64,000 nt of DNA from Gracilinanus agilis (taxonomy: Eukaryota), in contig NC_058132.1 of NCBI RefSeq assembly GCF_016433145.1, positions 8,292,523 through 8,356,522 of the forward strand, read 5' to 3'. This document shows positions 8,675-62,170 of the stretch, piece by piece. A program made the position numbers and the translations under genes. Each line of letters starts with the position of its first letter. The stretch's first letter is position 1. The notes below the pieces were generated by a model that saw only the letters and a list, made by a program, of their open reading frames with translations, was not told the DNA's origin and searched no databases.

Positions 8675-8864
8675 TTTCCTTCACTCCTTCATTCCCTCAT
8701 TCCATCACTCCTTCATTCCCTCATTTCTTCATTCCCTTATTCTTTCACTCCTTCATTTCCTCACTCCTTCATTCCTTCACTCCCTCATTTCTTCACTCCT
8801 TCATTCCCTCATTCCTTTCCTTCCTCATTCCTTCACTCCTTCATTCCCTCATTTCTTCATTCCC
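8675..8864. repeat. CT-rich minisatellite (TCATTCC/TCACTCCT-type units) running into the gap
   Basis: Repeated cttcattccctcatt and ttcactccttcattcc blocks. Confidence 0.9.
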
Positions 8865-9364
8865 NNNNNNNNNNNNNNNNNNNNNNNNNNNNNNNNNNNN
8901 NNNNNNNNNNNNNNNNNNNNNNNNNNNNNNNNNNNNNNNNNNNNNNNNNNNNNNNNNNNNNNNNNNNNNNNNNNNNNNNNNNNNNNNNNNNNNNNNNNNN
9001 NNNNNNNNNNNNNNNNNNNNNNNNNNNNNNNNNNNNNNNNNNNNNNNNNNNNNNNNNNNNNNNNNNNNNNNNNNNNNNNNNNNNNNNNNNNNNNNNNNNN
9101 NNNNNNNNNNNNNNNNNNNNNNNNNNNNNNNNNNNNNNNNNNNNNNNNNNNNNNNNNNNNNNNNNNNNNNNNNNNNNNNNNNNNNNNNNNNNNNNNNNNN
9201 NNNNNNNNNNNNNNNNNNNNNNNNNNNNNNNNNNNNNNNNNNNNNNNNNNNNNNNNNNNNNNNNNNNNNNNNNNNNNNNNNNNNNNNNNNNNNNNNNNNN
9301 NNNNNNNNNNNNNNNNNNNNNNNNNNNNNNNNNNNNNNNNNNNNNNNNNNNNNNNNNNNNNNNN
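8865..9364. other. Assembly gap (exactly 500 N)
   Basis: Run of N; the round size suggests a placeholder of unknown true length. Confidence 0.98.
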
Positions 9365-9769
9365 CCTACTCCCACCGGAGGGCGAAAGATTCCTGACTGG
9401 CCCAGAAACACCCTGTAAGAAGGGGCTAAACCCCAGCAAGAGGTCCCGGCTTCCTGAGCACAGGACATTGGGCCTCCTGCTCTCAGTTTCCCCAACTGTC
9501 AGATGAGGGAGTTGGGCTCCATGTCCTCCAAGACCTTTCCTTCTGGTGCACAAAATGGCGACTCCCACAATGCCCCTCCGGGGAGACTTTGGTGGACACC
9601 TAAGTTCAGCCTCGCCCCCACACACTCCCAGGGCCTGGATCCTGTCCCAGTATTTGGGCGCATGGCAGAATAGGGGGGCTGGAAGGGCCACAGGCTCCTT
9701 ATGGAGTGCGGGCTTCCCAGCGCAACCCCCACAAAGAACAACAAAGGCCAGGGGGGGACATGGAGGGCG

Positions 9770-36129: not shown

Positions 36130-37700
36130 GAGACTTCAACAACCCGATGTTTGAGAAACCCAAAGCTCGGAGGGTAAGAACACACCCTTTAACGAAAACC
36201 GCTGGGGAAACTGGGAAACAGTACGGCAGAAACTGCGTGTAGGCCAATATCTCACTCCCTATACCAAGATATGGTCAAAATGGGCATAAGATTTAGACGT
36301 AAAGCGTGATCCCATGAATAAATTGTGGGAATGTGCGATAGTTTACCTGGAAGCTCTATGGAGAGAGGAAGAATTGATCACCCAAAACAGAGATAGAGAG
36401 CATTATAAGATGCAAAATGAATAATTTTCATTCTATTAAATTTAAAAGCTTTCGTACAGACAAAACCAAGATGAGAAGGGAAACAACAAATTGGAGAATT
36501 TTTTTTTATAACGAATGTTTCTGATAAAGGCCTAATTTCTCAAATTTACAGAGAGCTAAGCCAAATTTATAAGAATCCAAGCCATTCCCCAATTGGCAAA
36601 TGGTCAAAGCCGGGTACCAACGAGCAATTTTCAGATGAGCAAGTGTTCTAAATCCCTCTTGATTGGAGAAATTCAAATTAAAATAATGCTAATGCACCAC
36701 CTCACACCTATCAGATTGGCTAATACGACAGTAAAGGAAAGCGATAAATGTTGGAGGGGATATGACAAAATTGGGACACTGATGCATTGTTGGTGGGGTT
36801 GTGAACTGACCAACGATACTAGAGGGCAATTTGGAACCATACCCAAAGGGCTATAAAATTGTGCATACCCTTTAATCCAGTAATATCACTTCTGGGTCTG
36901 TATATGCCCCCCAAAATCATTAAAAAAATGGAAAAGGACCTGCCTGGAGAAAAATATTTATAGCAGCCCTTTTTGTGGTGACAAAGAACTGGAAATTAAA
37001 GGGATGTCAATTGGGGAATGGCTGAACAAAGTGTGGTATATGATGGCAATTGTAAAAGTGAAATTTGGGAAATGTATCAAACTACATTTCCCGTGGTCCA
37101 ACTGGTTGCCGTTTCCGGTTTTTGGGCTTGGGAAGGCTTACGTCTTGACGCAGGGAAGGGTTTAAATCTCCTGGGTTAGGAGGAAGTGGTCTCTTTGCTA
37201 GTAGGGTCTTGGCCAGCAGATTTGGGAGGTAGAGACAGGAAACAAAATGGAGGCGGCAGTTTTGAATGCTTACAAGCACGTGGTCTAATGATTTTATCTA
37301 TCAGCATGGCTTTAATTAAAATACTAATTTATATATTTATACCAGCATTTATCATTTTTCATATTTATACAATAGAATACTATTGCATTATAAGAAAAGA
37401 TGAACAGGATGATTTCAGAGAAAGCTGGAAGGACCTACATGAACTGATGGAGAATGAAATAAGCAGAACCAGGAGAACACTGTACACTCTAACAGCAATA
37501 TTGTGGAATGATCAACTGTGAAAGACTTAGCTACTCTCAGCAATACAATGATCCAGAACAATTCTGAGGGACTTATGATGGAGGATGCTGTCCACTTCCA
37601 GAGAGAGCTGGATGCAGATCAAATCATACTACTTTTCACATTCGTTTATTTACAGTTTTATTTGGGGAGTTTTGGTTTCGTGTGAATATTCTCTTACGAA
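36130..37700 (+). mobile_element. L1 ORF2 3' part and 3'UTR, interrupted by a solo LTR
   Basis: HHLTPIRLA, KCWRG, GTLMHCWWGC and WKDLHELM motifs. Confidence 0.85.
37051..37369. mobile_element. Probable solo LTR inserted in L1
   Basis: Begins TGTAAAAG; flanked by CAAT direct repeats (37047-37050, 37370-37373); L1 sequence resumes in register. Confidence 0.7.
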
Positions 37701-40859: not shown

Positions 40860-42320
40860 TTTTCTTTATTTAGAATATTTTTCCATGGTTACATGATTCC
40901 TATTCCCTCCCTCCCTTCATCCCTTCCCCCTCCCAGAGATGACAAGCAATTCCATTGGGTTATACATGTATCATTTGTTCAAAACCTATTTCCATGTTAT
41001 TCATATTTGTTAATAGAGTGATCTTTTGACATTAAAACCCTAATCACATCCCCATCAAACCATGTGATTGATCCTGTGTTTTTCTTCTGCATTTCTGCTC
41101 CCACGGTTCTTTCTCTGGATGTGGATAGAGTTCTTTCTCATAAATTCCTCTGGATTGTCCTGGGTCATTGCTTTGTCCCTCTTTGTTTTATGAGGGCAGA
41201 ATTTCTGGAATATGAAGTCTGAACTCCTTTCCTTTACATTTCTATCAGGGCACTTAGAAATTTCCCATCAACCATCCAACAAGTATTTATCAATCTCATC
41301 CTAGGTGCTAAACTTTGGGGATAAAAGGCATAACCAGTCAGTCACCTCAATCAAAATGCTTACATCCTAGCCAGAGGAGACAATCTGTACATATGGGTAA
41401 ACAGCCTAGAAACAAAGGAGTGGAGAAAGGCACTATCTATTTTTTCTTCTGTTATCTCATAAAAATCTCAATTAATGAAGGAAGCAAAGAATCAGTGTCC
41501 TGTTGTGGGATTCACTCCATGTTCAGTCCCACCCTCTGACCATACCATAATCATCCCAAACTCCTATCAGATCACGTTATTCCACCTCTGGTTCTATATC
41601 CCCATCCCCTAACAATACAGGCGCTGCTGGCCCCTGGGGGATAATCATACATCTCCTCTCCTGAGATGTTACAAAGATGAAGAAAGTACAATTTTTTTTC
41701 AAAAGGTGGGTTCCTAGGGTATAAATTTCTTTTTTCCGCCCTTTTAAAATTTTTGAATATTTTCCCATAGTTACATGTTTCATGTTCTTTCTCCCCCAAA
41801 CCCCTCCCACCCCTCCACCCCCACCCTCCCCCATAGCCAACAATTCCACTGGGTTTTACATGTATCATTAAGACCTAATTCCATATTCCATATTATTGAT
41901 AGTTGGACTAGAGTTATCGTTTAGTGTCTACATCCCCAATAATATCTCCATCAGCCCATGTGTTCAAGCATTTGTTTTTCCTCTGTGTTTCTTCTCCCAC
42001 AGTTCTTCCTCTGAATGTGGCTAGTTTTCTTTCTCATAAGTCCCTCAGCCTTGCTCTGGATCCTTGCATTGTTGCATGTAGAGAAGTGCTTTTTGTTCGA
42101 TTGTACCACAGTGTATCAGTCTCTATGTACAATGCTCTCCTGGATCTGCTCCTTTCGCTCTGCATCAATTCCTGGAGGTCTTTCCAGTTTACATGGAATT
42201 CCTCCAGTTCATTATTCTTTTGAGCACAATAGTATTCTATCACCAACAGATACCACAATTTGTTCAGCCATTCCTCAATAGAAGGACATTCCCTCATTTT
42301 CCAATTTTTTTCCACTAGTG
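40860..42320 (-). mobile_element. L1 3' fragments (40860-41165 and 41730-42320)
   Basis: Minus ORF EWLNKLWYLLVIEYYCAQKNNELEEFHVNWKDLQELMQSERSR plus 3'UTR. Confidence 0.8.
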
Positions 42321-42908
42321 CATAAATTTCTGCTCAGACAAAACCCATAAGCTTTCCTCTGCTCTTACCCTCATGAGAATGTTCCATAAATACCAATCTT
42401 CTTTCCCCCTCCCTCCAGGCATAAAAAATGGGGGACGTTGGCAATCATCTGATGTGCTATCATGTTGCTTTACTGTTAGTGGGGTTTATGTGGGTACCTA
42501 CTTTTTCTTGAGGGAGATTTCTGTCCTACCTTCTGACATTGTTTCCACTCTCTAGGTGACAATACCACGCTGTTGACCCATTTCAGACTGACAGTCCCAG
42601 AACATTTTGGAAGATCAGTCTAGGTCCCCTCCCATCTTATCTTTATGATGTTTATTTTTAAAATCCAAGCAGAAGACTTTACATCTATTCTTAGTAAATC
42701 TCATGGGATCAGTCTTTGCCCTGGTGCTGGATCTAGCTCATCTTGGTTTTTCACCTACAAAGGACCGACCCCCAGGCTACCTTCCTCTCCTTGGTCTTCC
42801 ATTGGTATTGGAGACTTGGGATGAGAAGTCCTGTCTTGGTAAAGGAAGAAAGACCAGGGAACTTCTAGGGACAACCAGGAGCCAATTTTACCAGCAAATT
42901 TAATGATT

Positions 42909-43902: not shown

Positions 43903-46900
43903 CTAAGAGTATCGCGAGAGCTTGTTGTAGACGTGATCCAGGTTCCTGCAGAGAAACATCGAGAGCGACATGACCCCGAGCTAGGGAGAGAGGAAGGAGA
44001 CACGAGTGGGTCAGAAAGGGAGCCGGCATGGGCTGAGGACAAGGGTGGGTATGGGGTCAGGGCTCGCGGTTCGGGGCACAGACGCAGGGGGAGAGGCCAG
44101 AGTCAGGGCCGGCGGGTACAGAAGCAGGGCATCGCCGGTCCTGGGTCTGAGCCGATCCTTTATTCACAGCCCTGGGGCCCTAGCCTGCACACGGACCAGA
44201 TAAACGACTGCCGCGAGGTCCGACGCTCCCGTGGCAGCCAGCGCCCCATCACGGTGGGCAGGCGACTCGGCGCCGGGGCTCCCCACGTAGGGCACCTGTT
44301 GGCCGTGCACCAGGTGGGCAAGGGCGTCCCTGTCCCGCTGTTCCCGCCCTCCCCTGCCGTAGATGACTCGCCCTCCATCCCCTGGCGCCCGGTGTCCCAG
44401 CCCCGGGCGTGTGGCAGCAGCGCCAGCGTCAGCCCCAAAGCCACCACCTGCAACGGGACATGCGCATCAGCCGGGCCGGCCCCTGGGCCCGCTCACCATT
44501 TAGGCTTGTGCCAGAACACATCTCGCACATGCGAGAAGAGCATCTTCCCGCCCCCTTCTAGGCCCAGCTGTGGGAGGGTCTCTTTCTGCCCTGACCGATC
44601 AGATAAAAGACACACACACAGACATAGACACAGACACACACACAGACATAGACACAGACACACACTCTTTCACACGTACCCCCCCTTTCCCAGCCTCATC
44701 TGATTACTTCGATAGCAATCCGAGGGAAAGGTTGGGGATGGGTCCCTTCCTGCAGGAGCCAAGCTGAGAAGGGCTCCTTTCCATTTCTCACCATCATCTC
44801 GTTTGGGATTCATCTGACTTACTGCGGCCAACTGAGATAGAACCTACTCCGCCTCCCCATCTTTGGGCATCTGGCCTCAACTAAAAGAGACTGAGAATGG
44901 GTCCTCTTGGGCTACTCCAGGCTAAATTATGAAGGGCTCCGCCTTCCTTTCCTCAGCCAATGGGATAGGATGAGCTTCCCCCACCTCTTGGCTAATCAGA
45001 GGAGGGGCTGCCATCTCCCACCCTCGGAAGAGAGCGCAGGATCAGGGCGGATCCGCGATGGCAGGCGTATGTGTAGACTCTCTGGGGGGTGCGAGAAGAG
45101 GACCTGGTGCCAAGGTCCACCTCACCCAAGAAAGGTGGCTTGGCCTCGGCATTTCTTGGAAAAGGGAGGACAGGCGTGCGTGTGGGTGTGGGTGTGGGTG
45201 CTCCAGGCTCCGGAGAGGCGAAGGAAGGGGGTTAAACGGCCCCAGAAGGGCTCTCCTGGCCTGAGACTGGGTCCTCACCTCGAGCAGCCCCAGGCCCAAG
45301 CTGATGCCCACGATGGAGATGAGGTTGTTGTGCAGCCACGTGTAGAGGCTCCGAGAGCAGCCCTGTAGTGGCGGGGCTCGAGTTAGATCTACCCTCGCCC
45401 CAAAGCTCCTCCAGGGTCCCCCACCCAGTCCCCTCCCCCCGTGTTCTCTCCCCTTCTCCCTCCCGCCCCGCGGGACCTTCCCCGAAACCCACCTCCTGGT
45501 AAACTGAGCTATCCGCTGGCAGGGAGCACAGCTCGCCCGAGTGCAGCCGGGTAGCGGTCCCGGGGACGCCCGGACCGGGCAGGACCCTGCTGGCCTTGGC
45601 GCCAGGCCCGGGGGCAGGCTGGTTGACTTTGGAGACCTCCGCGGGGCTCGGGGGTGCGCCCATGATCACCGACGTGTTCTGGCAGGAGCAGGGCACTCGT
45701 GGAACCGGCTCCAGCGGACGGCTCGGGGACACCAAATCGCTGCTCCGGGTGGTCGGGGAGGAGGTGACGGTTCTTTCCCCGCCGCTGGGGGCCGAGCCAT
45801 TAGGCCGAAGGGAGGACGCCAGCCACCAGTCCTGGGGAGAGTCCCAGCCGCAGCAGCGAAGCTGGTGACAGAGGGAGGGGCCGGCTCACCGGGAGAAAGA
45901 TGCTCACGCACAGGCAGGGGCCTGGCTCCGGGCGGGGCACTGTGCGTGCACAGAGGACCCTGGCCCGCGGGGTCCCAGGGAAACCCGAGTTGGGAGGGAG
46001 ATGGCGGCCGGGACTCCCACCTGGAACTGCACGAAATCCCAGTTCTCGGCCGTGCTGTACGCGTCTGGGTACTTGTGGTAATTTTCGATAACGTCCAGGA
46101 CGATAAGCTTCACCTTCCGCTCCAGCTGGCCCGGAGAAGGGGGGAGAGGGACACATAAGCCGGCTTCTCCGCTTCCCAGAGCGGGCCTCGGCTCCTCCTC
46201 TGTCCTCTCTCCCTTCCTCAGTCTCCCGCGCCCAGCCTGCCTCCAGGGTCTAGCCTCTGGTTTCCGATCTCCAGCTTTCCTGGGCTGCTTCCCGAAGCAT
46301 CGCCTTCTCTCCGACTCGCCTCGCGTGCCCACAGGCCCTTTCGGGCTGGCTCTCCTCCACCTGGCAGGCAGCCCCTGGCGGGCTCCCTCCCACTTCTCTC
46401 TGCGTCTGTCTCTGCTCCTCCCCGCCCTCCTCCTTTCTGCCCCCTCCGTCCCAGCCCCTTTCCTTCTGCCTCGTTCCGGGCACGTGTGTCTCAGCCTCAG
46501 TCTCCCTCTCTGGCTCTAGCTCGGGGGTTTTATTTCCCCCCAGGCCAGCGCGGAAGGTCTCACTCACCGAGCCATGCTGGGTGTAGATGAGGACTCCGAT
46601 GGTGATCTGGGCGGTAAACAGCAACAGCAGAAGACCAAAGTACTGAGGGGAGGGGAAGGGTTAGGACCTGCATCCGGGGCTCAGGGAGAGCAGGGGAGGA
46701 GGGGGAGAGACGGGACGCTCCCTAGGGAAACCGAGGGCTAGGGGGGAGCTTTCAGACTCCAAAGGGGAGGGGGGGGTCCCGGAGGATGGTAGGGAGCATC
46801 TCCAGGCTTGCGGGGTACCAGGAGGCATTTGAGGACCACTCACGAGGCCAAGGAGGCAGCGGATCTCCTTGAGGGCGCCAAGGCAGCCGAGGAAGGACAG

Positions 46901-47326
46901 GACGCCCGTGAAGACCCCAGAGATCGCCATGGCATAGGACCACATTTTCAGCGGCGTGAAGGACATGCCTGCGGACACCCACGGGTCAAAAGGAAGCTGG
47001 GGGCAGAGCTAGAATGGTCGCCTGAGGCCACGTGAAGGTATCCGGGCTTGGGACTGCTAGGGTTGGGGTAGAAAATCTCTTACCCAGGAAGGAGGCAAAG
47101 CTGTTCTTGTCCACGAGAATCCACAGCCCGAAGCAGAATATGAGGCTGCCCAGGACCTGAGGAGGCAGGGAGGGCTGAGTGGGGGACCCGGCCCAAGATG
47201 GATCCAAGAGGAGGTGGGAGGAGGAGGGGGCGCACAGGGCTTAGGGGAGGGATAACTCACGAAGAAGAAGATGTTGAAGACAAAGAGGAAATATTTGATG
47301 AGGCTGAGGCAGCCCTTCCCCGCCAT
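43903..47326 (-). CDS. CD37: Leukocyte tetraspanin CD37, 324 aa
   Basis: Coding exons 47326-47261, 47156-47084, 46968-46844, 46642-46568, 46125-46021, 45861-45493, 45362-45279, 43980-43903, total 975 nt, frame consistent. [36 protein letters not shown] and the C-terminus [16 protein letters not shown] are diagnostic. Confidence 0.97.
44160..44447 (-). CDS. Candidate terminal exon inside CD37 intron 7 (95 codons; alternative CD37 C-terminus or nested small secreted protein)
   Basis: Acceptor tgtcccgttgcag at 44448, phase-0 open frame [16 protein letters not shown]...QGCE*, stop TAA overlapping AATAAA (44164-44159), CpG-rich. Confidence 0.45.
   Translation of the reverse strand: MVALGLTLALLPHARGWDTGRQGMEGESSTAGEGGNSGTGTPLPTWCTANRCPTWGAPAPSRLPTVMGRWLPRERRTSRQSFIWSVCRLGPQGCE
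44609..44665. repeat. Compound CA/CAGA short tandem repeat in CD37 intron 7
   Basis: cacacacacagacatagacacagaca present twice. Confidence 0.8.
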
Positions 47327-48194
47327 GATCTTAACCCGGGGCTGTAGAGACAAGGAATGAAGAGATGCAGAGGCTCAGAGGTTCCCAGAGATACAGATAG
47401 CCAAAGCTGGAGCTTCAAGTCCCAGCATTCCTCCGGGCTCTCCAGCCAACCCTCCTCCAGTTCCCAGTTTCAGCCAATGGTACCAACGTGTCCGTGGCCA
47501 CTCAGGTTCGCAGCTTTGGAGTGATTCTGGACTGCTCCCTCTCCCTTCCCCCGAAACCCAATGGGCTCCAGACCGAACCAGTTCTCGTCTGGATTTCACT
47601 TCTGCATCAACAAGAGAGAGCAGATCGGCCAGTGGAGTGTAGAGGGGTAAAGAACTAGACTGTGAAACCACCACGTGTGTCTTTTCCAGCCTGCCCCCTT
47701 TTCCCCCAGTCCCACTGGGGCACCCCTTTGGGGTTCAGACCTCCAGCCAGCGCTCCTCTCCTGGACTATCGCATCATTTATTTAAATGCCTCTCAGGGAC
47801 TGCAATCTGGCCAGTCCTTGCCCTCAGGGAGCTTTCATTCTCTGGTTAGGGGCACACAGAGGAAATGGGGTAGGGGTCCGAGGGGCTAGCAATTTAGGGG
47901 CCTGGGAAAGAGCTCCTGTTGGAAATGAGCTTGAAAGCAACACCATCGAATAGACTTCTCACTGGTCTACCTGCCTCCAGGCTCTCCCTGTGCCTTCCAT
48001 TTATTATTTCCACACTGCCCGAGCTAGGCAGCTTCCTAATATCCTTCTCTGCCCTAAGGCCTTCCATGGCTCTTCTCTGCCTTCAGGATACTTTTATCTT
48101 CTGATCCTGCAAGGAATTCAGGACCTCCAGACCTCCCTTTCGGAAGTTCAGTCTCCCCACCCCATCTTCCCCAGACTTCTACCCTCTAGCTAAG

Positions 48195-48430
48195 GTGCTG
48201 AAGTGGATAGCCTGGAGTCATGAAGCCTCCTCTCTCTGAGTTCAAATAAATCTGGACTCAGATGCTGCCTAGCTCTATGGCCTTGGGCGAATCATTTAAT
48301 CTTGTTTGCCTCAGTTTCCTCATATGCCAAATGAGCTGGAGAGGAAATGGCACTCCAAGCCACACTTTGCCGAGAAGATACCAAATGGGGCCTCGAAGAG
48401 TCAGATATGACTGAAAATTAACATACTCCA
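48195..48430 (+). mobile_element. MAR1-like SINE
   Basis: CORE plus tail gaagagtcagatatgactgaaa. Confidence 0.7.
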
Positions 48431-49184
48431 GCCAATATAAGGGAACTTCCTTCCTGTTTTCTGATCTTTCCCCTCTTCTGCTCCCATGTATTTGCATTCC
48501 AGGCCTGGAATAAACAAACACCTTCCTTCCAATGGAGATGAGGGAAGAGCACCTTATGACCAATGGAAGGAATCTCCATCTTGATAATAACAAGATTCTC
48601 ATAAGTTTGACATTCTCTCTACTTTCTGGAACCTCACCTCTAGAGGGGTGGCAGTTCAGAAAGAAGAGTGCTATGAGGACCTGGGTTCGAATCCCACCTC
48701 AGGTATTTGCTACTTGGCGTCACCCTGGGTGAGTCAATTTAGCTCCTGGACCTCAGTTGCTCTTAGAGACTTGGGTTTGATGACCCCTAAGACCGCTTCC
48801 AATTCTCAGTCTGTGATCCTTCAATGCTGTGACCTTTCTTCAAACCTCCAACTCCAGCACAGCTTTTTCATGAAGCCCAGAGGACCTCTGTCTCTTCAGA
48901 CTGTCCCCGAGTCTTAGCTTTAGCCTATCCTTGCCACATAGTTTTCTGTCAATCCATCTTGCTTCTCTCTTTACACTGTAAGCTTTTTGAGAGCAAGGAC
49001 TGCATTATGTTGGAGCTCAGGGCCTTGTAAACAGTAGTTGCTTAATGTGGAAAGGAGAGAGGGAGACTGAAATAAAGAGGGGGCAAACTGAGGGAGGGCC
49101 ATGCTCAACAAAGAAAACTCTAAAAGAGGAAGCGCCTCTAGGCCCTGCCCCCTTCCCAGCTTCCCCAGCCCAAAACACACACAC

Positions 49185-49916
49185 CTCCTCTAGGTGCCTG
49201 GTCTCCTTAGATCTCTCTGAACCCTCAGTTTCCTTGGGGCCCCTAAAGTCCAGATAACTGTATCGGGTCCTGGTCTTCTCAGGCCTTCTAGGACTTTTGG
49301 TTTCCTCAGAATCTCTGATCTCAGGCTCCTGAGAACTGGCTTGGGTCCTGGTCTTCTCAGTCTCTTCAGGTCCTCCGCTCTCTCCTGAACTTATCTTTAA
49401 AACTGAATCCTTGGTCCCCTCCCATCCCTCTGGATCTCTGATCTCAGTCTCCTCTGAGGTCCAGGTCTCCCCTGACCTCCAGGCCTCCATAGATCTCTCT
49501 GGGTCCCTGGTGTTCTTAGTGTCCCCTGGGTCTCTGATTTCCTTAATCTCCCCTGGACCCTTAGTCTCAGTGTCCCCCAAGGTCTCCCTGTTATCCACAA
49601 TCTCATCTAGCCACCTGACCCCCTGTGGTCTCCTCAGTGTCCTGGAAGCTCTGGTCTCCTTAGTGTCCCCTGGGCTCCTGATCCCTTTCATCTCCTCTGG
49701 GTCCCTATTGTCCTCAATCTCCTTGGATCCCTCTGGGTCCCTAAGCTCAGTCTCTTCTGGGCCCCTGATCTCCTCTTCACTCTCCTCTGGGGTCCTGATT
49801 TCCTCCAACCCCTGTGGGCTACTGGTCTCCTTAGAGCTCTGGGGATCCCTTGCCTCCTCTGATTCCCTGATCCCTGCCGTCCCTAAGTCCTGGAGGGACC
49901 CCTCCCACCTCTTCAT
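49185..49916 (-). CDS. Candidate coding exon, acidic low-complexity repeat domain (244 codons)
   Basis: Pyrimidine-rich acceptor ending at 49921, then AGCC-ATG at 49916. Open frame of about 15 degenerate IRDPEETKE-like units, then donor GAG|GTGTGT at 49185. Confidence 0.5.
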
Positions 49917-50599
49917 GGCTCTGGGATATGGAGATAGAGAGAGGGATGGTCTGTGGGTCCAGGGCAGCTCCTGTTTGGGCTTTGCCTTCATCCAGATCTC
50001 CTCTTTACCCTAGCCCAAGCCAGACCAGGCTCTACCTCACAGAGCCTGGATGACTTCATGGACTCCTGGGAGGCTGGCTTTGGCTCAGTCTGCCCCTTAG
50101 GCTGCCCCCTCTGTCTTTTCTCTCCCCCTCCGAGGCTGAGAGGAAGCCAGAATGTCATGGCTGGAAGGAACCTTGGAGAGAGTTGAGTCCAAGCCCCTCA
50201 TTTGTCAGAGGAGGAGAGTGAGGCCACATCCGGGGTTTCTCCCTGTCTCAGAGTCCCAGTCTGTCTTGTTGCCCCTCTTTTTTGTTGTTGTTGTTTGCCT
50301 GGCTCTCCCCCACCCCCACCCCCCAATGTGGCCAGTATCTCTCTGTCTCTGGGGCTCGGTGCCTCAGCCTCCAGGGGTCTTTCCCTGGTTCTCCGCCCTC
50401 GGCACCTGGGCTTTGGCGGGATCCTTTGGGGCAGAGCATCCACAGACTCCCCACCCCTCACCCCAGGAAGTACAGTGGCTTCCTCCCGTGTCTCAGGCGA
50501 CGCCTGAGGAAGTGGGGGGAAGGGCAGCGACCCGGGGAGGAGAACACCAAGGCTCTTGGTGGCCCACGGTGACTCGGGGGTTGGGGTAGGGTGGAGGTG

Positions 50600-52000
50600 A
50601 TGGGGGGAAGCCTCAGGGGCTGGGACCTCGTGTTGGAGGTGCGCGGGGACAGCAATGGAGACAGCCACGGAGTCGCCGGGTAACGAATAACGGGCTTGGC
50701 GGAGTTCTTCTCTTAATGCTTAGAGATCTCTAGTTGAGATGCAGGAGAGTGCTGGAAGAGGCGGGAGACTCAGACGCTTGGAGAAAGGAGAAAGGGGGGA
50801 GGGGGTTATTTCTTAAGTGCTTAGAGATCCATTTCCGCCGGTGACTGTGAGTGTGAGTGTGAGTGTGAGTGTGCGTGTCGTACGCGCGCGCGCGAGAAAG
50901 CAAGCACAAGGAGGACCGAGGATGCCTTGAGCGTCATCCTTAAGCGTGTGGATTCTCCATTCCAGAGCACTAGTGTGTGTGGGACCTGAAGAGCGGAGTA
51001 AGTTGGCCAGGCGCCCCTCAAGCGCTTAGAGATCCCCCCTGAGCTGAAGGTAAGGTCCGCTCACCTCGTAAGAAGCTCGGCTCAGGCCGGAAGGACCGCG
51101 GGTAGTCTGGGTGGCCGAGCGACCCCTTAGGTTTTGGATGGCTCCTTAGACTCGTGTGCCCGGAGCCACCAGGCAGGCGTGGGGAGGGAGCCGGCTTCCT
51201 CGCCTCCCACCTGCGCAGCGAAGGAGGAGACGCGAACTGCCTGGTGCTCGGAGGGGGCGGGGCCAGGGTCCTAGAGGCCCCTCCCCTGGAAGCCTTGGGT
51301 TTGAGGCTGCTCGCGGTCCCCTCGGACTCCGCCCACGACGCCTCCGCCTCCGAAGTCCGCCACCTTCGGCCCGCTGCTCCCGTCTGGAGAGACCCCGCGT
51401 TCTGTTTTGGGGGTGGTCCCCTAGTTCTGAGTGGGAGCGAGGCGCCTGCGTTCCATGCCGAGGCTCTAGGGGGACTGAGGCAGCCCCCGAGTTCGAAAGC
51501 TGAGTTCTCGCGTTTGTGTCGGGGAATACCTCTTTGGACCTCAGTTTCCCCATTTGCACGATATGGGGGCTGGGCTCCGTCTCAGTGAGCCCCTCAGGAA
51601 GGGGTTCTATACTCCTGGCCTCCCCCTCCTAACTCTTGGGGTCTCTGCACTGTCCCCGCCGGAGCGGGGGATTTGGCCTAGAAAGCTCCGGAAACTGTCC
51701 ATGTGGGCGCTGAGCCGGGGGCCAGATGCTGGGCGAGGGGGGTGGCAGGCCATGCCCGACTCCCCAAACCCTTGTCTCCTTCCTGTCTCCCCAGCCAGGC
51801 ACGGCTCTCTTCCTGTCCGTTTTCGCGCCGCGCACGGGGGGATCCCCTAGTTATTTTGGGAGCTGCCCTTGGGGCTCTGCAGGGTCTGCTTGAAGTTCCA
51901 CCCGCAATGAGCCAGCTGCCTGGGGAGAAGACCTTCTGCCTCGTCGGGGAGGGAGGGGCGGGGCGGGGCGGATCTGGCTGCGGCCAGCCTCTATTCGACT
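50600..52000. promoter_or_regulatory. CpG island, probable bidirectional promoter between CD37 and the SLC6A16-like remnant
   Basis: CpG-dense. Plus donor AAG|GTAAGG (exon end 51049); minus donors GAG|GTGAGC (exon end 51065) and GG|GTGAGG (exon end 50462). Confidence 0.55.
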
Positions 52001-59269: not shown

Positions 59270-59905
59270 TGTTTTTATTTGCAAGATTTTATTTAATTAA
59301 TTGATTTAGAATATTTTTCCATGCTTACATGATTCATGTTCTTTCCCTCTCTTCCTCCCACCCCCCTCTCATAGCCAACAAGCAATTCCACTGGGTTTTA
59401 CATGTGTCATTGATCCAGACCAATTTCCATATTATTGATATTTGCACTAGGGTGACTGTTTAGAGTCTACATCCCCAATCATGTCCCCATCGACCCATCT
59501 GATCAGGCAATTGTTTTTCTTCTGTGTTTCTACTCCCACAGTTCTTTCTCTGGACGTGAATAGTTTTCTTTCTCATAAGTCCCTCAGAATTGTCCTGGAT
59601 TATTGCATTGCTGCTAGTAGAGAAGTCCATTACATTCTTTTTTACCACAGTGTGTCAGTCTCTATGTACAATTTTCTCCTGGTTCTTCTCCTTTCACTCT
59701 GCATCAATTCCTGGAGGTCTTTCCAGTTCACATGGAATTCCTCCAGTTTATTATTCCTTTGAGCACAATAGTATTCCATCACCAGCATATACCACAGTTT
59801 GTTCAGCCATTCCCCAATTGAAGGGCAGACTCTCATTTTCCAAATTTTTGCCACCATAAAGAGTACAGCTATGAATATTTTGTATGTCTTTTTCTTTATT
59901 TCCTT
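59270..59905 (-). mobile_element. L1 3' end
   Basis: Minus ORF CPSIGEWLNKLWYMLVMEYYCAQRNNKLEEFHVNWKDLQELM, 3'UTR and T-rich tail. Confidence 0.85.
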
Positions 59906-60089
59906 TTTCCCTGTATAAACCCAGCAGTGGTATCAGCCCAATCAACTCTGACTCTCATGAAGCTAAGCTCAAAGCACTAAGTGATCACTCTCAACCACTA
60001 TGGATAGTCTCCTATAAATGGCATTTGAGCCACAGCTTACTGATGGGCCCTTTAGGATTCAATTCAACATTGAACCCCTCCAATGGGCC

Positions 60090-60970: not shown

Positions 60971-61369
60971 CAAGTCCAATGCTTTTTAAATATCATAAAG
61001 CAAATTCTTAAAAGAGAAGCAACCAAGAATAAATCCACTATTCCACAAATGGACTCCTACATATGTTTAAATTAGGGCAGAACTAAACTAAATCTCTGGT
61101 TAAATGCTTGTAAGCTGCCAGACTGGGGGCTCTGAGCTATTATGATACTATTACTCACTTAATAAAAACTTCCTAAAGGAGAAGAAAGAGCCTCATGGAC
61201 CTAATAGTCCATCACATTGCTCTGGTTAAAATGAACTGATATCATAACCTTGTAACTGATTACATCTCCAGAGACCAAGGGAAGAAGTTAGGAAAGGATG
61301 ATGAGAATTCTTATTGGTTAACTTCACCATTTCAATCTCCCTCTGAAACACCAGTATTTAGCGCTGTTA

Positions 61370-62170
61370 CAAGTGCGTGAGTGTAGCGCATTGTTGTTGG
61401 AGTTGTGAACTGGTCCAACCATTCTGGAGAGCAATTTGGAACTATGCTCAAAAGGCGATAAAACTATGCATACCCTTTGATTCATTAATGCCACTGCTAG
61501 GTCTCTATGCCAATGAAATTTTTTTTAAAGAGAAAAGGACCTGTTTGTACAAAAATATATAGCAACTCTTTTTGTGGTAGCAAAGGATTGGAAATTGAGG
61601 GGATATTTATCAATTGGGGAATGACTGAACAAATTGTATATGTTGGTGATAGAATACTATTACACTATAAAAAATGATGAGTAGAATGACTTCAGAAAAG
61701 CCTAGAAAGACCTACATGAATGGATACAGAGAGAAATGAGTAGAACCAGGAGAACTTTGTACACAGTAGCAGCAATACTGTACAGTAATTGACTGTGAAT
61801 GATTTAGATACCTTCAATAATGCAAAGATCCGAGTCAATTCTGCAGGATTTATGACAAAGAATGTTCTCCCCCTCCAGAGAAAGAATTGATGGAATCTGA
61901 ATGCAGATGGAAGCATATTATTTTCCACTTTATTTTGCTGTGTTTTTATTTTGGAGTCTGAGTTTTATATGAGTATTCTCTCACAACATGACCAATATGG
62001 AAATATGTTTTGCATGATTATATGTGAATAACCCAGATCAAATTGCTCACCATCTTCGGGGAAGGGGAGGGAAGGGAAGGAGGGGGCCAATTTGGACTTT
62101 ATAATTTCTGGAAATGTTAAAATTAAATTTATTATATGTCATTGGGAAAATATTACAAAATATTAAAAAG
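61370..62170 (+). mobile_element. L1 ORF2 3' end and UTR
   Basis: HCCWSCELVQPFWRAIWNYAQKAIKLCIPFD...LLGLY. Confidence 0.85.

What the first reader, a model, noticed from the sequence alone, without database searches (positions are those of the whole stretch)
47326..49920. 244-codon acidic repeat exon that can splice in frame onto CD37
Seen: strong acceptor, AGCC-ATG (49916), about 15 degenerate R-x-P-E-E units that keep one open frame, and a phase-0 donor at 49185. The CD37 first coding exon has a phase-0 acceptor (47341) with 15 stop-free nt (PRVKI) before its ATG. Inference: a 573-aa CD37 isoform with a disordered, charged cytoplasmic N-domain driven from the 50.6-51.4 kb CpG island, perhaps in germ cells given the neighbouring testis genes. 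Otherwise an independent orphan gene, whose frame stays open to 49017.
Basis: partly seen in the sequence, partly recalled or inferred. Interest (0 to 1): 0.7.

Follow-up and report, generated by a model that had tools for sequence, protein, structure and literature searches.

The report
Acidic repeat exon extending marsupial CD37
A 244-codon acidic repeat exon upstream of the immune-cell gene CD37 matches the first coding exon of long CD37 forms that NCBI predicts in three other marsupials, so it is probably real but already catalogued.

Summary
On the minus strand there is an acceptor AG before 49920, an ATG at 49916, 244 stop-free codons of degenerate I-R-D-P-E-E-T-like units, and a GT donor after 49185. 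CD37 exon 1 has an acceptor at 47341 and five stop-free in-frame codons (PRVKI) before its ATG at 47326.

The open frame is not chance: 0 of 5000 dinucleotide shuffles keep it open. The repeat motif sits in one codon phase in 11 of 12 copies.

A search of 1.84 billion proteins gave one hit: Monodelphis domestica "leukocyte antigen CD37 isoform X2" (E 1.8e-79, 78% identity). Tammar wallaby and bilby carry homologous extended CD37 models (43-45% identity), so frame, motif and junction are kept across American and Australian marsupials.

The window's CD37 exons match the Gracilinanus agilis model, which lacks the extension. No stand-alone homologue exists. AlphaFold2 predicts disorder (pLDDT 46).

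Verdict: an unannotated orthologue of an already predicted marsupial-specific CD37 N-terminal extension. Moderate interest.

The parts
49917..49922 (-). Acceptor AG (49922-49921) after a pyrimidine tract, plus 4 nt of 5' leader (AGCC) before the ATG
   Evidence: Sequence. Use of this acceptor was not tested.
49185..49916 (-). Acidic tandem-repeat coding exon: 244 codons, ATG at 49916, phase-0 end. Orthologue of the first coding exon of the extended CD37 isoforms of other marsupials.
   Evidence: Hit to XP_056652702.1 at E 1.8e-79. Alignments A1/A2. Single in-frame tblastn match 49916-49155 to Monodelphis isoform X3.
49183..49184 (-). GT donor (GAG|GTGTGT)
   Evidence: Sequence. Its position matches the ...HLEE| end of the exon in the Monodelphis models.
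49017..49184 (-). Read-through tail of the open frame (55 codons plus stop), lying inside the intron under the spliced model
   Evidence: No homologue of this tail in any search.
47342..49182 (-). Intron between the acidic exon and CD37 exon 1. It is CpG-poor and has stretches that look like short interspersed repeats at about 48240-48800.
   Evidence: tblastn of Monodelphis isoform X3 finds no coding match in it.
47327..47341 (-). Five-codon in-frame linker PRVKI behind the acceptor AG at 47343-47342
   Evidence: Sequence. The linker is conserved as PQVKI, EEVKA and PEVKA in Monodelphis, bilby and wallaby.
47261..47326 (-). CD37 canonical start codon and first 22 codons ([22 protein letters not shown])
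   Evidence: 100% to Gracilinanus agilis CD37, XP_044523064.1.
43906..47156 (-). Remaining CD37 coding exons (tetraspanin body)
   Evidence: tblastn of P0002 against the window. PF00335 is listed for the orthologues.
50500..51500 (.). CpG-rich region and candidate upstream promoter, with consensus-like donors at 51065 (GAG|GTGAGC) and 50462 (GGG|GTGAGG)
   Evidence: Sequence only; use not tested.

Best explanation
Window 49185-49916 (minus strand) is a conserved, marsupial-specific alternative first coding exon of CD37. Transcripts that begin upstream of it start translation at the AUG at 49916. They splice from the donor after 49185 to the acceptor at 47341 and read through five linker codons into the normal CD37 frame. 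The product would be a 573-aa tetraspanin whose normally very short cytoplasmic N-tail carries about 250 residues of acidic, Pro/Gly-punctuated, intrinsically disordered repeats (net charge -22). Transcripts that start closer to exon 1 would give the ordinary 324-aa protein. The exon most likely arose by expansion of a stop-free 27-30-nt unit. It evolves fast in residue sequence but keeps its frame, motif, start and junction. Shown here: the anatomy, the open frame beyond chance, homology to extended CD37 models in three species, and predicted disorder. Inferred: splicing and translation in this species, the promoter, and any function. Possible functions are a charged spacer, or a phospho-regulated docking region next to the ITIM-like tyrosine of the CD37 N-tail.
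For: The single library hit is Monodelphis CD37 isoform X2: E 1.8e-79, 78% identity, its residues 1-267 matching the ORF from the 49916 Met onward. Monodelphis X1 and X3, wallaby X1-X4 and bilby X1-X2 carry the homologous extension, joined to MAEKGCLSL... through a conserved x-x-V-K-[IA] linker. The similarity is not just composition: Smith-Waterman z-scores are 57, 18 and 16 against residue shuffles, and the other two frames of the exon score at the shuffle level. The frame is open in 0 of 5000 shuffles. The motif is in one phase with spacings that are multiples of three. A single in-frame tblastn match covers the whole exon. The window's CD37 exons match G. agilis CD37 at 100% in their cores. 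No stand-alone homologue exists. AlphaFold2 gives mean pLDDT 46 and no secondary structure.
Against: There is no RNA or protein evidence for this species. The listed runs of a second organism hold only 5% of the words and their type is a guess. The G. agilis RefSeq model lacks the extension. The three supporting proteins are automated XP_ models whose transcript support I could not inspect. Only three marsupial species in the protein library show the extension. Residue-level constraint looks weak: paralogous units differ about equally at codon positions 1, 2 and 3 (18/19/22). The extension is 80% identical to Monodelphis against 96% for the CD37 core. No orthologous DNA could be fetched for a dN/dS test.
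Confidence: 0.78

Rival explanations
1. The exon is transcribed and spliced onto CD37 exon 1 but serves only as a 5' leader. The long protein is then an artefact of gene predictors choosing the longest open frame, and the extended protein is not made or has no function.
For: All support comes from automated models. Residue-level constraint is weak: 18/19/22 differences by codon position, and 80% against 96% identity. The ATG at 49916 has a purine at -3 but no G at +4.
Against: A leader has no reason to keep 196-257 codons open, in the same frame as CD37, with the same start region and linker, in four species from both American and Australian marsupials. Composition alone gives an open frame in 0 of 5000 shuffles. 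If the exon is in the mRNA, scanning ribosomes meet its AUG first and no stop follows.
Confidence: 0.1
2. It is an independent single-exon orphan gene of 299-324 aa, using the frame that stays open to 49017, and is unrelated to CD37 expression.
For: The frame continues 55 codons past the donor to a stop at 49017. AATAAA hexamers occur about 1 kb downstream.
Against: No protein of 134-427 aa in 5.8 billion clusters resembles it, either with the single sequence or with the four-species profile. Every homologue is fused to CD37 at the ...LEE| position. The post-donor tail has no homologue.
Confidence: 0.04
3. In this species the stretch is a silent, degenerate minisatellite upstream of CD37. Its open frame is then a leftover of a stop-free purine-rich repeat unit.
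For: The strand is purine-rich (68% A+G). The antisense strand also has a 200-aa ORF. Unit lengths of 27 and 30 nt would keep the frame by themselves. The G. agilis annotation has no exon here.
Against: Unit spacings vary (24, 27, 30, 36, 45, 72 nt) yet all are multiples of three. The non-repeat N-terminal block (M-x-x-W-E-x-SLQ..GTA) and the C-terminal block (KET.GSE...ETR.LEE) are conserved with other marsupials. The exon is intact with the same start and donor as in Monodelphis.
Confidence: 0.06

Closest known systems
NCBI RefSeq models of extended CD37: Monodelphis domestica isoforms X1/X2/X3 (XP_056652701.1, XP_056652702.1, XP_016277942.2), Notamacropus eugenii X1-X4 (XP_072463463.1 to XP_072463466.1), Macrotis lagotis X1/X2 (XP_074075873.1, XP_074075874.1)
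   Same: A homologous acidic I-R-D-P-E-E-T-type repeat extension of 196-257 residues. It has the same start region in the opossums and the bilby, and the same in-frame junction through a five-residue linker into MA[GE]KGCLSL... of CD37.
   Different: In this genome, whose CD37 exons match Gracilinanus agilis, the public model XP_044523064.1 starts at the canonical Met and has no extension. Repeat number and unit lengths differ between species: 244, 257, 196 and 249 residues.
Canonical CD37 (tetraspanin, PF00335) as described in eutherians
   Same: The downstream exons encode an ordinary four-pass tetraspanin. The N-tail keeps the membrane-proximal ...CLSLIKYF... segment, which holds the tyrosine described as a weak ITIM in human CD37 (PMC7765243).
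   Different: Eutherian CD37 is described with cytoplasmic tails of only 8 to about 14 residues (PMC7765243). Here about 250 extra residues would precede that tail. No non-marsupial protein with this extension was found.
Fungal Tsp2 tetraspanins
   Same: They are tetraspanins with an unusually long N-terminal cytoplasmic tail of 83-200 aa (PMC2278132). This shows that the fold tolerates long N-tails.
   Different: They show no sequence relation and come from a different kingdom. Their long tail is constitutive, not an alternative repeat exon.

Membership tests
Extended CD37 isoform of marsupials (as in the RefSeq XP_ models) | N-terminal extension homologous to the acidic repeat region of the annotated isoforms | tested here: met
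   E 1.8e-79 and 78-80% identity to Monodelphis; 43-45% to bilby and wallaby; z-scores 16-57 against shuffles.
Extended CD37 isoform of marsupials (as in the RefSeq XP_ models) | The exon lies directly upstream of CD37 exon 1 on the same strand, with no other coding exon between | tested here: met
   tblastn of Monodelphis isoform X3 gives 49916-49155, then 47344-47258, then the remaining CD37 exons, all on the minus strand.
Extended CD37 isoform of marsupials (as in the RefSeq XP_ models) | Phase-compatible donor and acceptor giving the conserved ...LEE | x-x-V-K-[IA]-M junction | tested here: met
   GT after 49185 (phase 0) and AG before 47341, with PRVKI in frame. The same junction appears in three species.
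Extended CD37 isoform of marsupials (as in the RefSeq XP_ models) | A spliced transcript that carries the exon exists in this species | not testable with these tools
No listed run is on record as RNA.
Tetraspanin (PF00335) | Four-pass tetraspanin body encoded downstream | tested here: met
   The window exons match G. agilis CD37 at 100% in the match cores. PF00335 is precomputed for the orthologues. I did not rescan the window exons against Pfam.
Independent orphan gene | Stand-alone homologous gene models in relatives | tested here: not met
   There were no hits among proteins of 134-427 aa, with the single sequence or with the profile.
Non-coding minisatellite | Unit lengths and indels unconstrained by triplet phase, and frame not conserved between species | tested here: not met
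   Eleven of 12 motif copies lie in one phase, and the frame is kept in four species.
Any Pfam family for the extension itself | Match to a curated domain | tested here: not met
   No families at E up to 1. The protein atlas gave no credible neighbour: best score 0.82, recognition value low.

The most novel reading that the evidence does not exclude
The extended protein is really made and is a marsupial-wide innovation at least as old as the split between American and Australian marsupials. On this reading a protein domain was born from an expanding stop-free tandem repeat in the CD37 5' region. It puts a ~250-residue acidic, probably phosphorylatable disordered arm next to the ITIM-like tyrosine of the N-tail, and so changes CD37 signalling or its packing in the tetraspanin web. 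It might be the main CD37 form in opossums, since all three Monodelphis models carry it, or a tissue-specific form expressed from an upstream CpG-island promoter.
Probability: 0.45. Interest if true: 0.55.

Novelty: new member of a known kind. Interest (0 to 1): 0.4.

Why it matters
CD37 is a much-studied leukocyte tetraspanin and a drug target, and its cytoplasmic tails are described as only 8-14 residues long. A conserved ~250-residue acidic repeat arm on that tail in marsupials would be a natural experiment in how tail length and charge affect tetraspanin signalling. It would also be a clear case of a coding exon born from a tandem repeat and kept in frame over a long time. In practical terms, the exon appears to be missing from this genome's public CD37 model, so this is an annotation correction. 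Nothing here is new to the sequence databases: the same architecture is already predicted for three other marsupials. My two marsupial and tetraspanin-tail paper searches found no paper describing it.

Tried and rejected
Searches and tests that gave nothing or could not run:
- Pfam scan of the 244-aa and 324-aa translations: nothing.
- Protein atlas feature search: only unrelated bacterial hypothetical proteins at 0.82 with a low recognition value; discarded.
- Word search with the 244-aa exon, limited to proteins of 134-427 aa: nothing. This first looked like absence of relatives but was an effect of the length limit, because the relatives are 513-664 aa.
- Profile search with the four-species alignment: nothing in that length band either.
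No transcript test was therefore possible.
- Orthologous DNA for dN/dS and indel-phase tests: not obtainable. P0001 is not on record, the Monodelphis and wallaby files are too large, and the bilby look-up got no answer.
- Codon-position test on paralogous units: no third-position excess. This gives no support for residue-level selection.
- Scan of open segments at 51.6-64 kb and 33-43.9 kb for neighbouring genes: only segments that look like interspersed repeats, and no recognisable exon, so the owner of the CpG island stays unknown.

Considered and rejected: the 200-aa antisense ORF at 49411-50013 as a gene. It is the pyrimidine-rich mirror of the exon and has no support.
Full report
**1. Observation**

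- A pyrimidine tract ends in AG at 49922-49921.
- The exon opens AGCC-ATG, with the ATG at 49916.
- 732 nt (244 codons) follow without a stop up to 49185.
- The next bases are GT (GAG|GTGTGT), so the donor is phase 0.
- The same frame stays open upstream to an ATG at 49991 and downstream to a stop at 49017, giving a 324-aa ORF.
- CD37 exon 1 begins behind ...tctctacag at 47341 with CCC CGG GTT AAG ATC (PRVKI), in frame with the ATG at 47326. It ends after 22 codons at 47261.

The translated exon is 20% Glu. It has 65 acidic and 43 basic residues (net charge -22) and 13 R-x-[PS]-[EGQ] anchors. Tandem Repeats Finder sees only three short two-copy arrays, of period 18, 27 and 30, so the repeat is old and degenerate.

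**2. Is it more than chance?**

Several tests say it is.
- None of 5000 dinucleotide-preserving shuffles keeps this frame open, and 0.16% keep any of the six frames open. The two other sense frames have 8 and 24 stops.
- The 20-nt core motif occurs five times at 3 or fewer mismatches. All five are inside the exon, against 0.02 expected in the 64-kb window.
- With looser matching, 11 of 12 copies lie in the same codon phase. Their spacings of 24, 27, 30, 36, 45, 72 nt and so on are all multiples of three.
- One test does not help. Differences of paralogous units from their consensus are spread evenly over codon positions (18/19/22). The residue sequence of the units is therefore weakly constrained.

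**3. What it is**

Pfam, the protein atlas and a first word search gave nothing. The word search only sees proteins of 134-427 aa.

The exhaustive search of 1.84 billion representatives with the 324-aa ORF gave exactly one hit, P0001 (652 aa). It scored E 1.8e-79 at 78% identity, with its residues 1-267 matching the ORF from the Met of 49916 onward. P0001 is XP_056652702.1, "leukocyte antigen CD37 isoform X2 [Monodelphis domestica]". Its cluster holds Monodelphis isoforms X1 (664 aa) and X3 (594 aa), and also the 324-aa CD37 of Gracilinanus agilis.

In the Monodelphis proteins the acidic region ends ...ETRHLEE and continues [18 protein letters not shown]....

A search restricted to residues 1-270 of Monodelphis X3 found two more clusters: CD37 isoforms of Notamacropus eugenii (E 8e-18) and of Macrotis lagotis (E 1e-16). 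Both species have extended and non-extended isoforms.

The four extensions align with 80%, 43% and 45% identity to the window. The bilby and both opossums share the N-terminal block M-x-x-W/Q-E-x-SLQ..GTA. All four share the I-R-[DGTS]-P-[EG]-[ED]-[TS] units, a C-terminal KET.GSE...ETR.LEE-like block, and the x-x-V-K-[IA]-M linker.

Smith-Waterman scores exceed residue shuffles by z = 57, 18 and 16. The other two frames of the window exon score at the shuffle level.

Local tblastn shows one in-frame match over the whole exon (49916-49155), followed directly by CD37 exon 1 and the remaining exons. The window's CD37 exons equal the G. agilis protein at 100% in the match cores. The window is therefore from G. 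agilis or a very close relative, and that species' public CD37 model lacks the extension.

I never built, searched or folded the joined 573-aa sequence.

**4. How it most likely works**

- Shown: an intact open exon with consensus-like splice sites, in phase with CD37 and homologous to the first coding exon of extended CD37 models in three other marsupials, including Australian species.
- Shown: it is predicted to be disordered. AlphaFold2 on the four-sequence alignment gives mean pLDDT 46, pTM 0.11 and no secondary structure.
- Inferred, transcript use: transcripts that start upstream include the exon and begin translation at its AUG. They splice 49185>47341 and yield a 573-aa CD37 whose cytoplasmic N-tail is lengthened by about 250 residues. 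Transcripts that start near exon 1 give the 324-aa form. The wallaby and bilby models, which have both forms, fit this picture.
- Inferred, topology: tetraspanin N-termini are cytoplasmic and the extension has no signal peptide-like segment, so it should stay cytoplasmic.
- Background: eutherian CD37 tails are described as 8 to about 14 residues, with a weak ITIM tyrosine in the N-tail (PMC7765243). The segment ...CLSLIKYF... that holds that tyrosine is kept here.
- Speculation: a long polyampholyte arm beside it could act as a charged spacer or a phospho-regulated docking region. The exon has 10 [ST]-x-x-[DE] sites, and several units read R-[ST]-P.
- Origin: the most likely route is expansion of a stop-free 27-30-nt unit in the CD37 5' region before the split of American and Australian marsupials.
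- Rate: the extension evolves several times faster than the core. It is 80% identical to Monodelphis against 96% for the core, and 43-45% identical to the Australian species against about 81%. Such a difference is usual for disordered repeats.

**5. Rivals**

- Leader-only exon with a fortuitous frame. The retention of 196-257 open in-frame codons in four lineages argues against it.
- Independent orphan gene using the frame to 49017. No stand-alone homologue exists, and the post-donor tail has no match.
- Silent minisatellite in this species. This cannot be excluded without RNA, but the exon is intact and the non-repeat blocks are conserved.

**6. What could not be done**

- Later reads and scripts stopped at 51500 or began at 51600.
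- The only exception is that the whole window served as the subject database of a local tblastn inside my own scripts.
- The run table shows one holder of unknown type with 92% of the words, and 22 runs of another organism with 5% each, whose RNA label is a guess. I draw no conclusion on expression from it.
- Orthologous DNA could not be fetched, so no dN/dS or DNA-level indel-phase test was made.
- The CpG-rich region at about 50.5-51.5 kb and the donor-like sites at 51065 and 50462 are present in the sequence, but their use is untested.
- No neighbouring gene was recognised within the window that could own the CpG island.
- Nothing bears on germ-cell expression.

**7. Comparison and novelty**

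The closest known things are the RefSeq models themselves, and this locus meets their sequence and structural features. The one feature I could not test is the transcript in this species.

Long N-tails occur in fungal Tsp2 tetraspanins (83-200 aa; PMC2278132), but those proteins are unrelated.

The two searches aimed at marsupial CD37 and at long tetraspanin N-tails found no paper on an extended marsupial CD37. The only marsupial paper among the CD37 hits that I opened lists a bandicoot CD37 EST (PMC1802078).

The finding is therefore a new, unannotated member of an already predicted kind. It is useful as an annotation fix and modestly interesting as biology.

**8. Verdict**

- Confidence in the extended-isoform reading is about 0.78.
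- Interest is 0.4.

Noticed in passing
window 44163-44453 (-): Inside the last CD37 intron, 97 open codons ([20 protein letters not shown]...RLGPQGCE behind a CAG acceptor) match the alternative C-terminus of CD37 isoforms X1/X2 of Monodelphis (91% identity), wallaby X1 (61%) and bilby X1 (57%). This looks like a conserved alternative terminal coding exon that replaces the end of the fourth membrane helix and the C-tail. It overlaps first-reader note s1-153859, which read the stretch as a nested secreted-peptide gene.
   Followed up: partly
window 49411-50013 (+): A 200-aa Ser/Leu-rich ORF lies antisense to the acidic exon. It is most simply the pyrimidine-rich mirror of a purine-rich coding strand. 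It was not searched on its own.
   Followed up: no
window 50500-51500: A CpG-rich region (observed/expected 0.55-1.1, GC up to 72%) holds a CACT/CA-type microsatellite at about 50845-50900. No coding exon of a neighbouring gene was recognised in the 12 kb beyond it, so its owner is unknown.
   Followed up: partly
They were left alone afterwards and nothing is claimed about them.
   Followed up: no
window about 8850-9400: A run of N (assembly gap or mask) is flanked on its low-coordinate side by a short tandem repeat that translates as SFIPSFLHS-like units.
   Followed up: no
window 37180-37518 (+), 42037-42333 (-), 59645-59932 (-), 61362-61559 (+): Open segments with motifs such as WLNKLWY...EYYCA and ...WKDLQELM... 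recur on both sides of CD37. From memory they look like fragments of LINE-type retrotransposon ORF2. Not tested.
   Followed up: no
P0002 / window 45264-46131 (-): Marsupial CD37 proteins are 313-332 aa, which from memory is longer than the roughly 281-aa eutherian protein. The extra length appears to lie in a Pro/Ser/Gly-rich stretch of the large extracellular loop. It was not compared with a eutherian sequence here.
   Followed up: no
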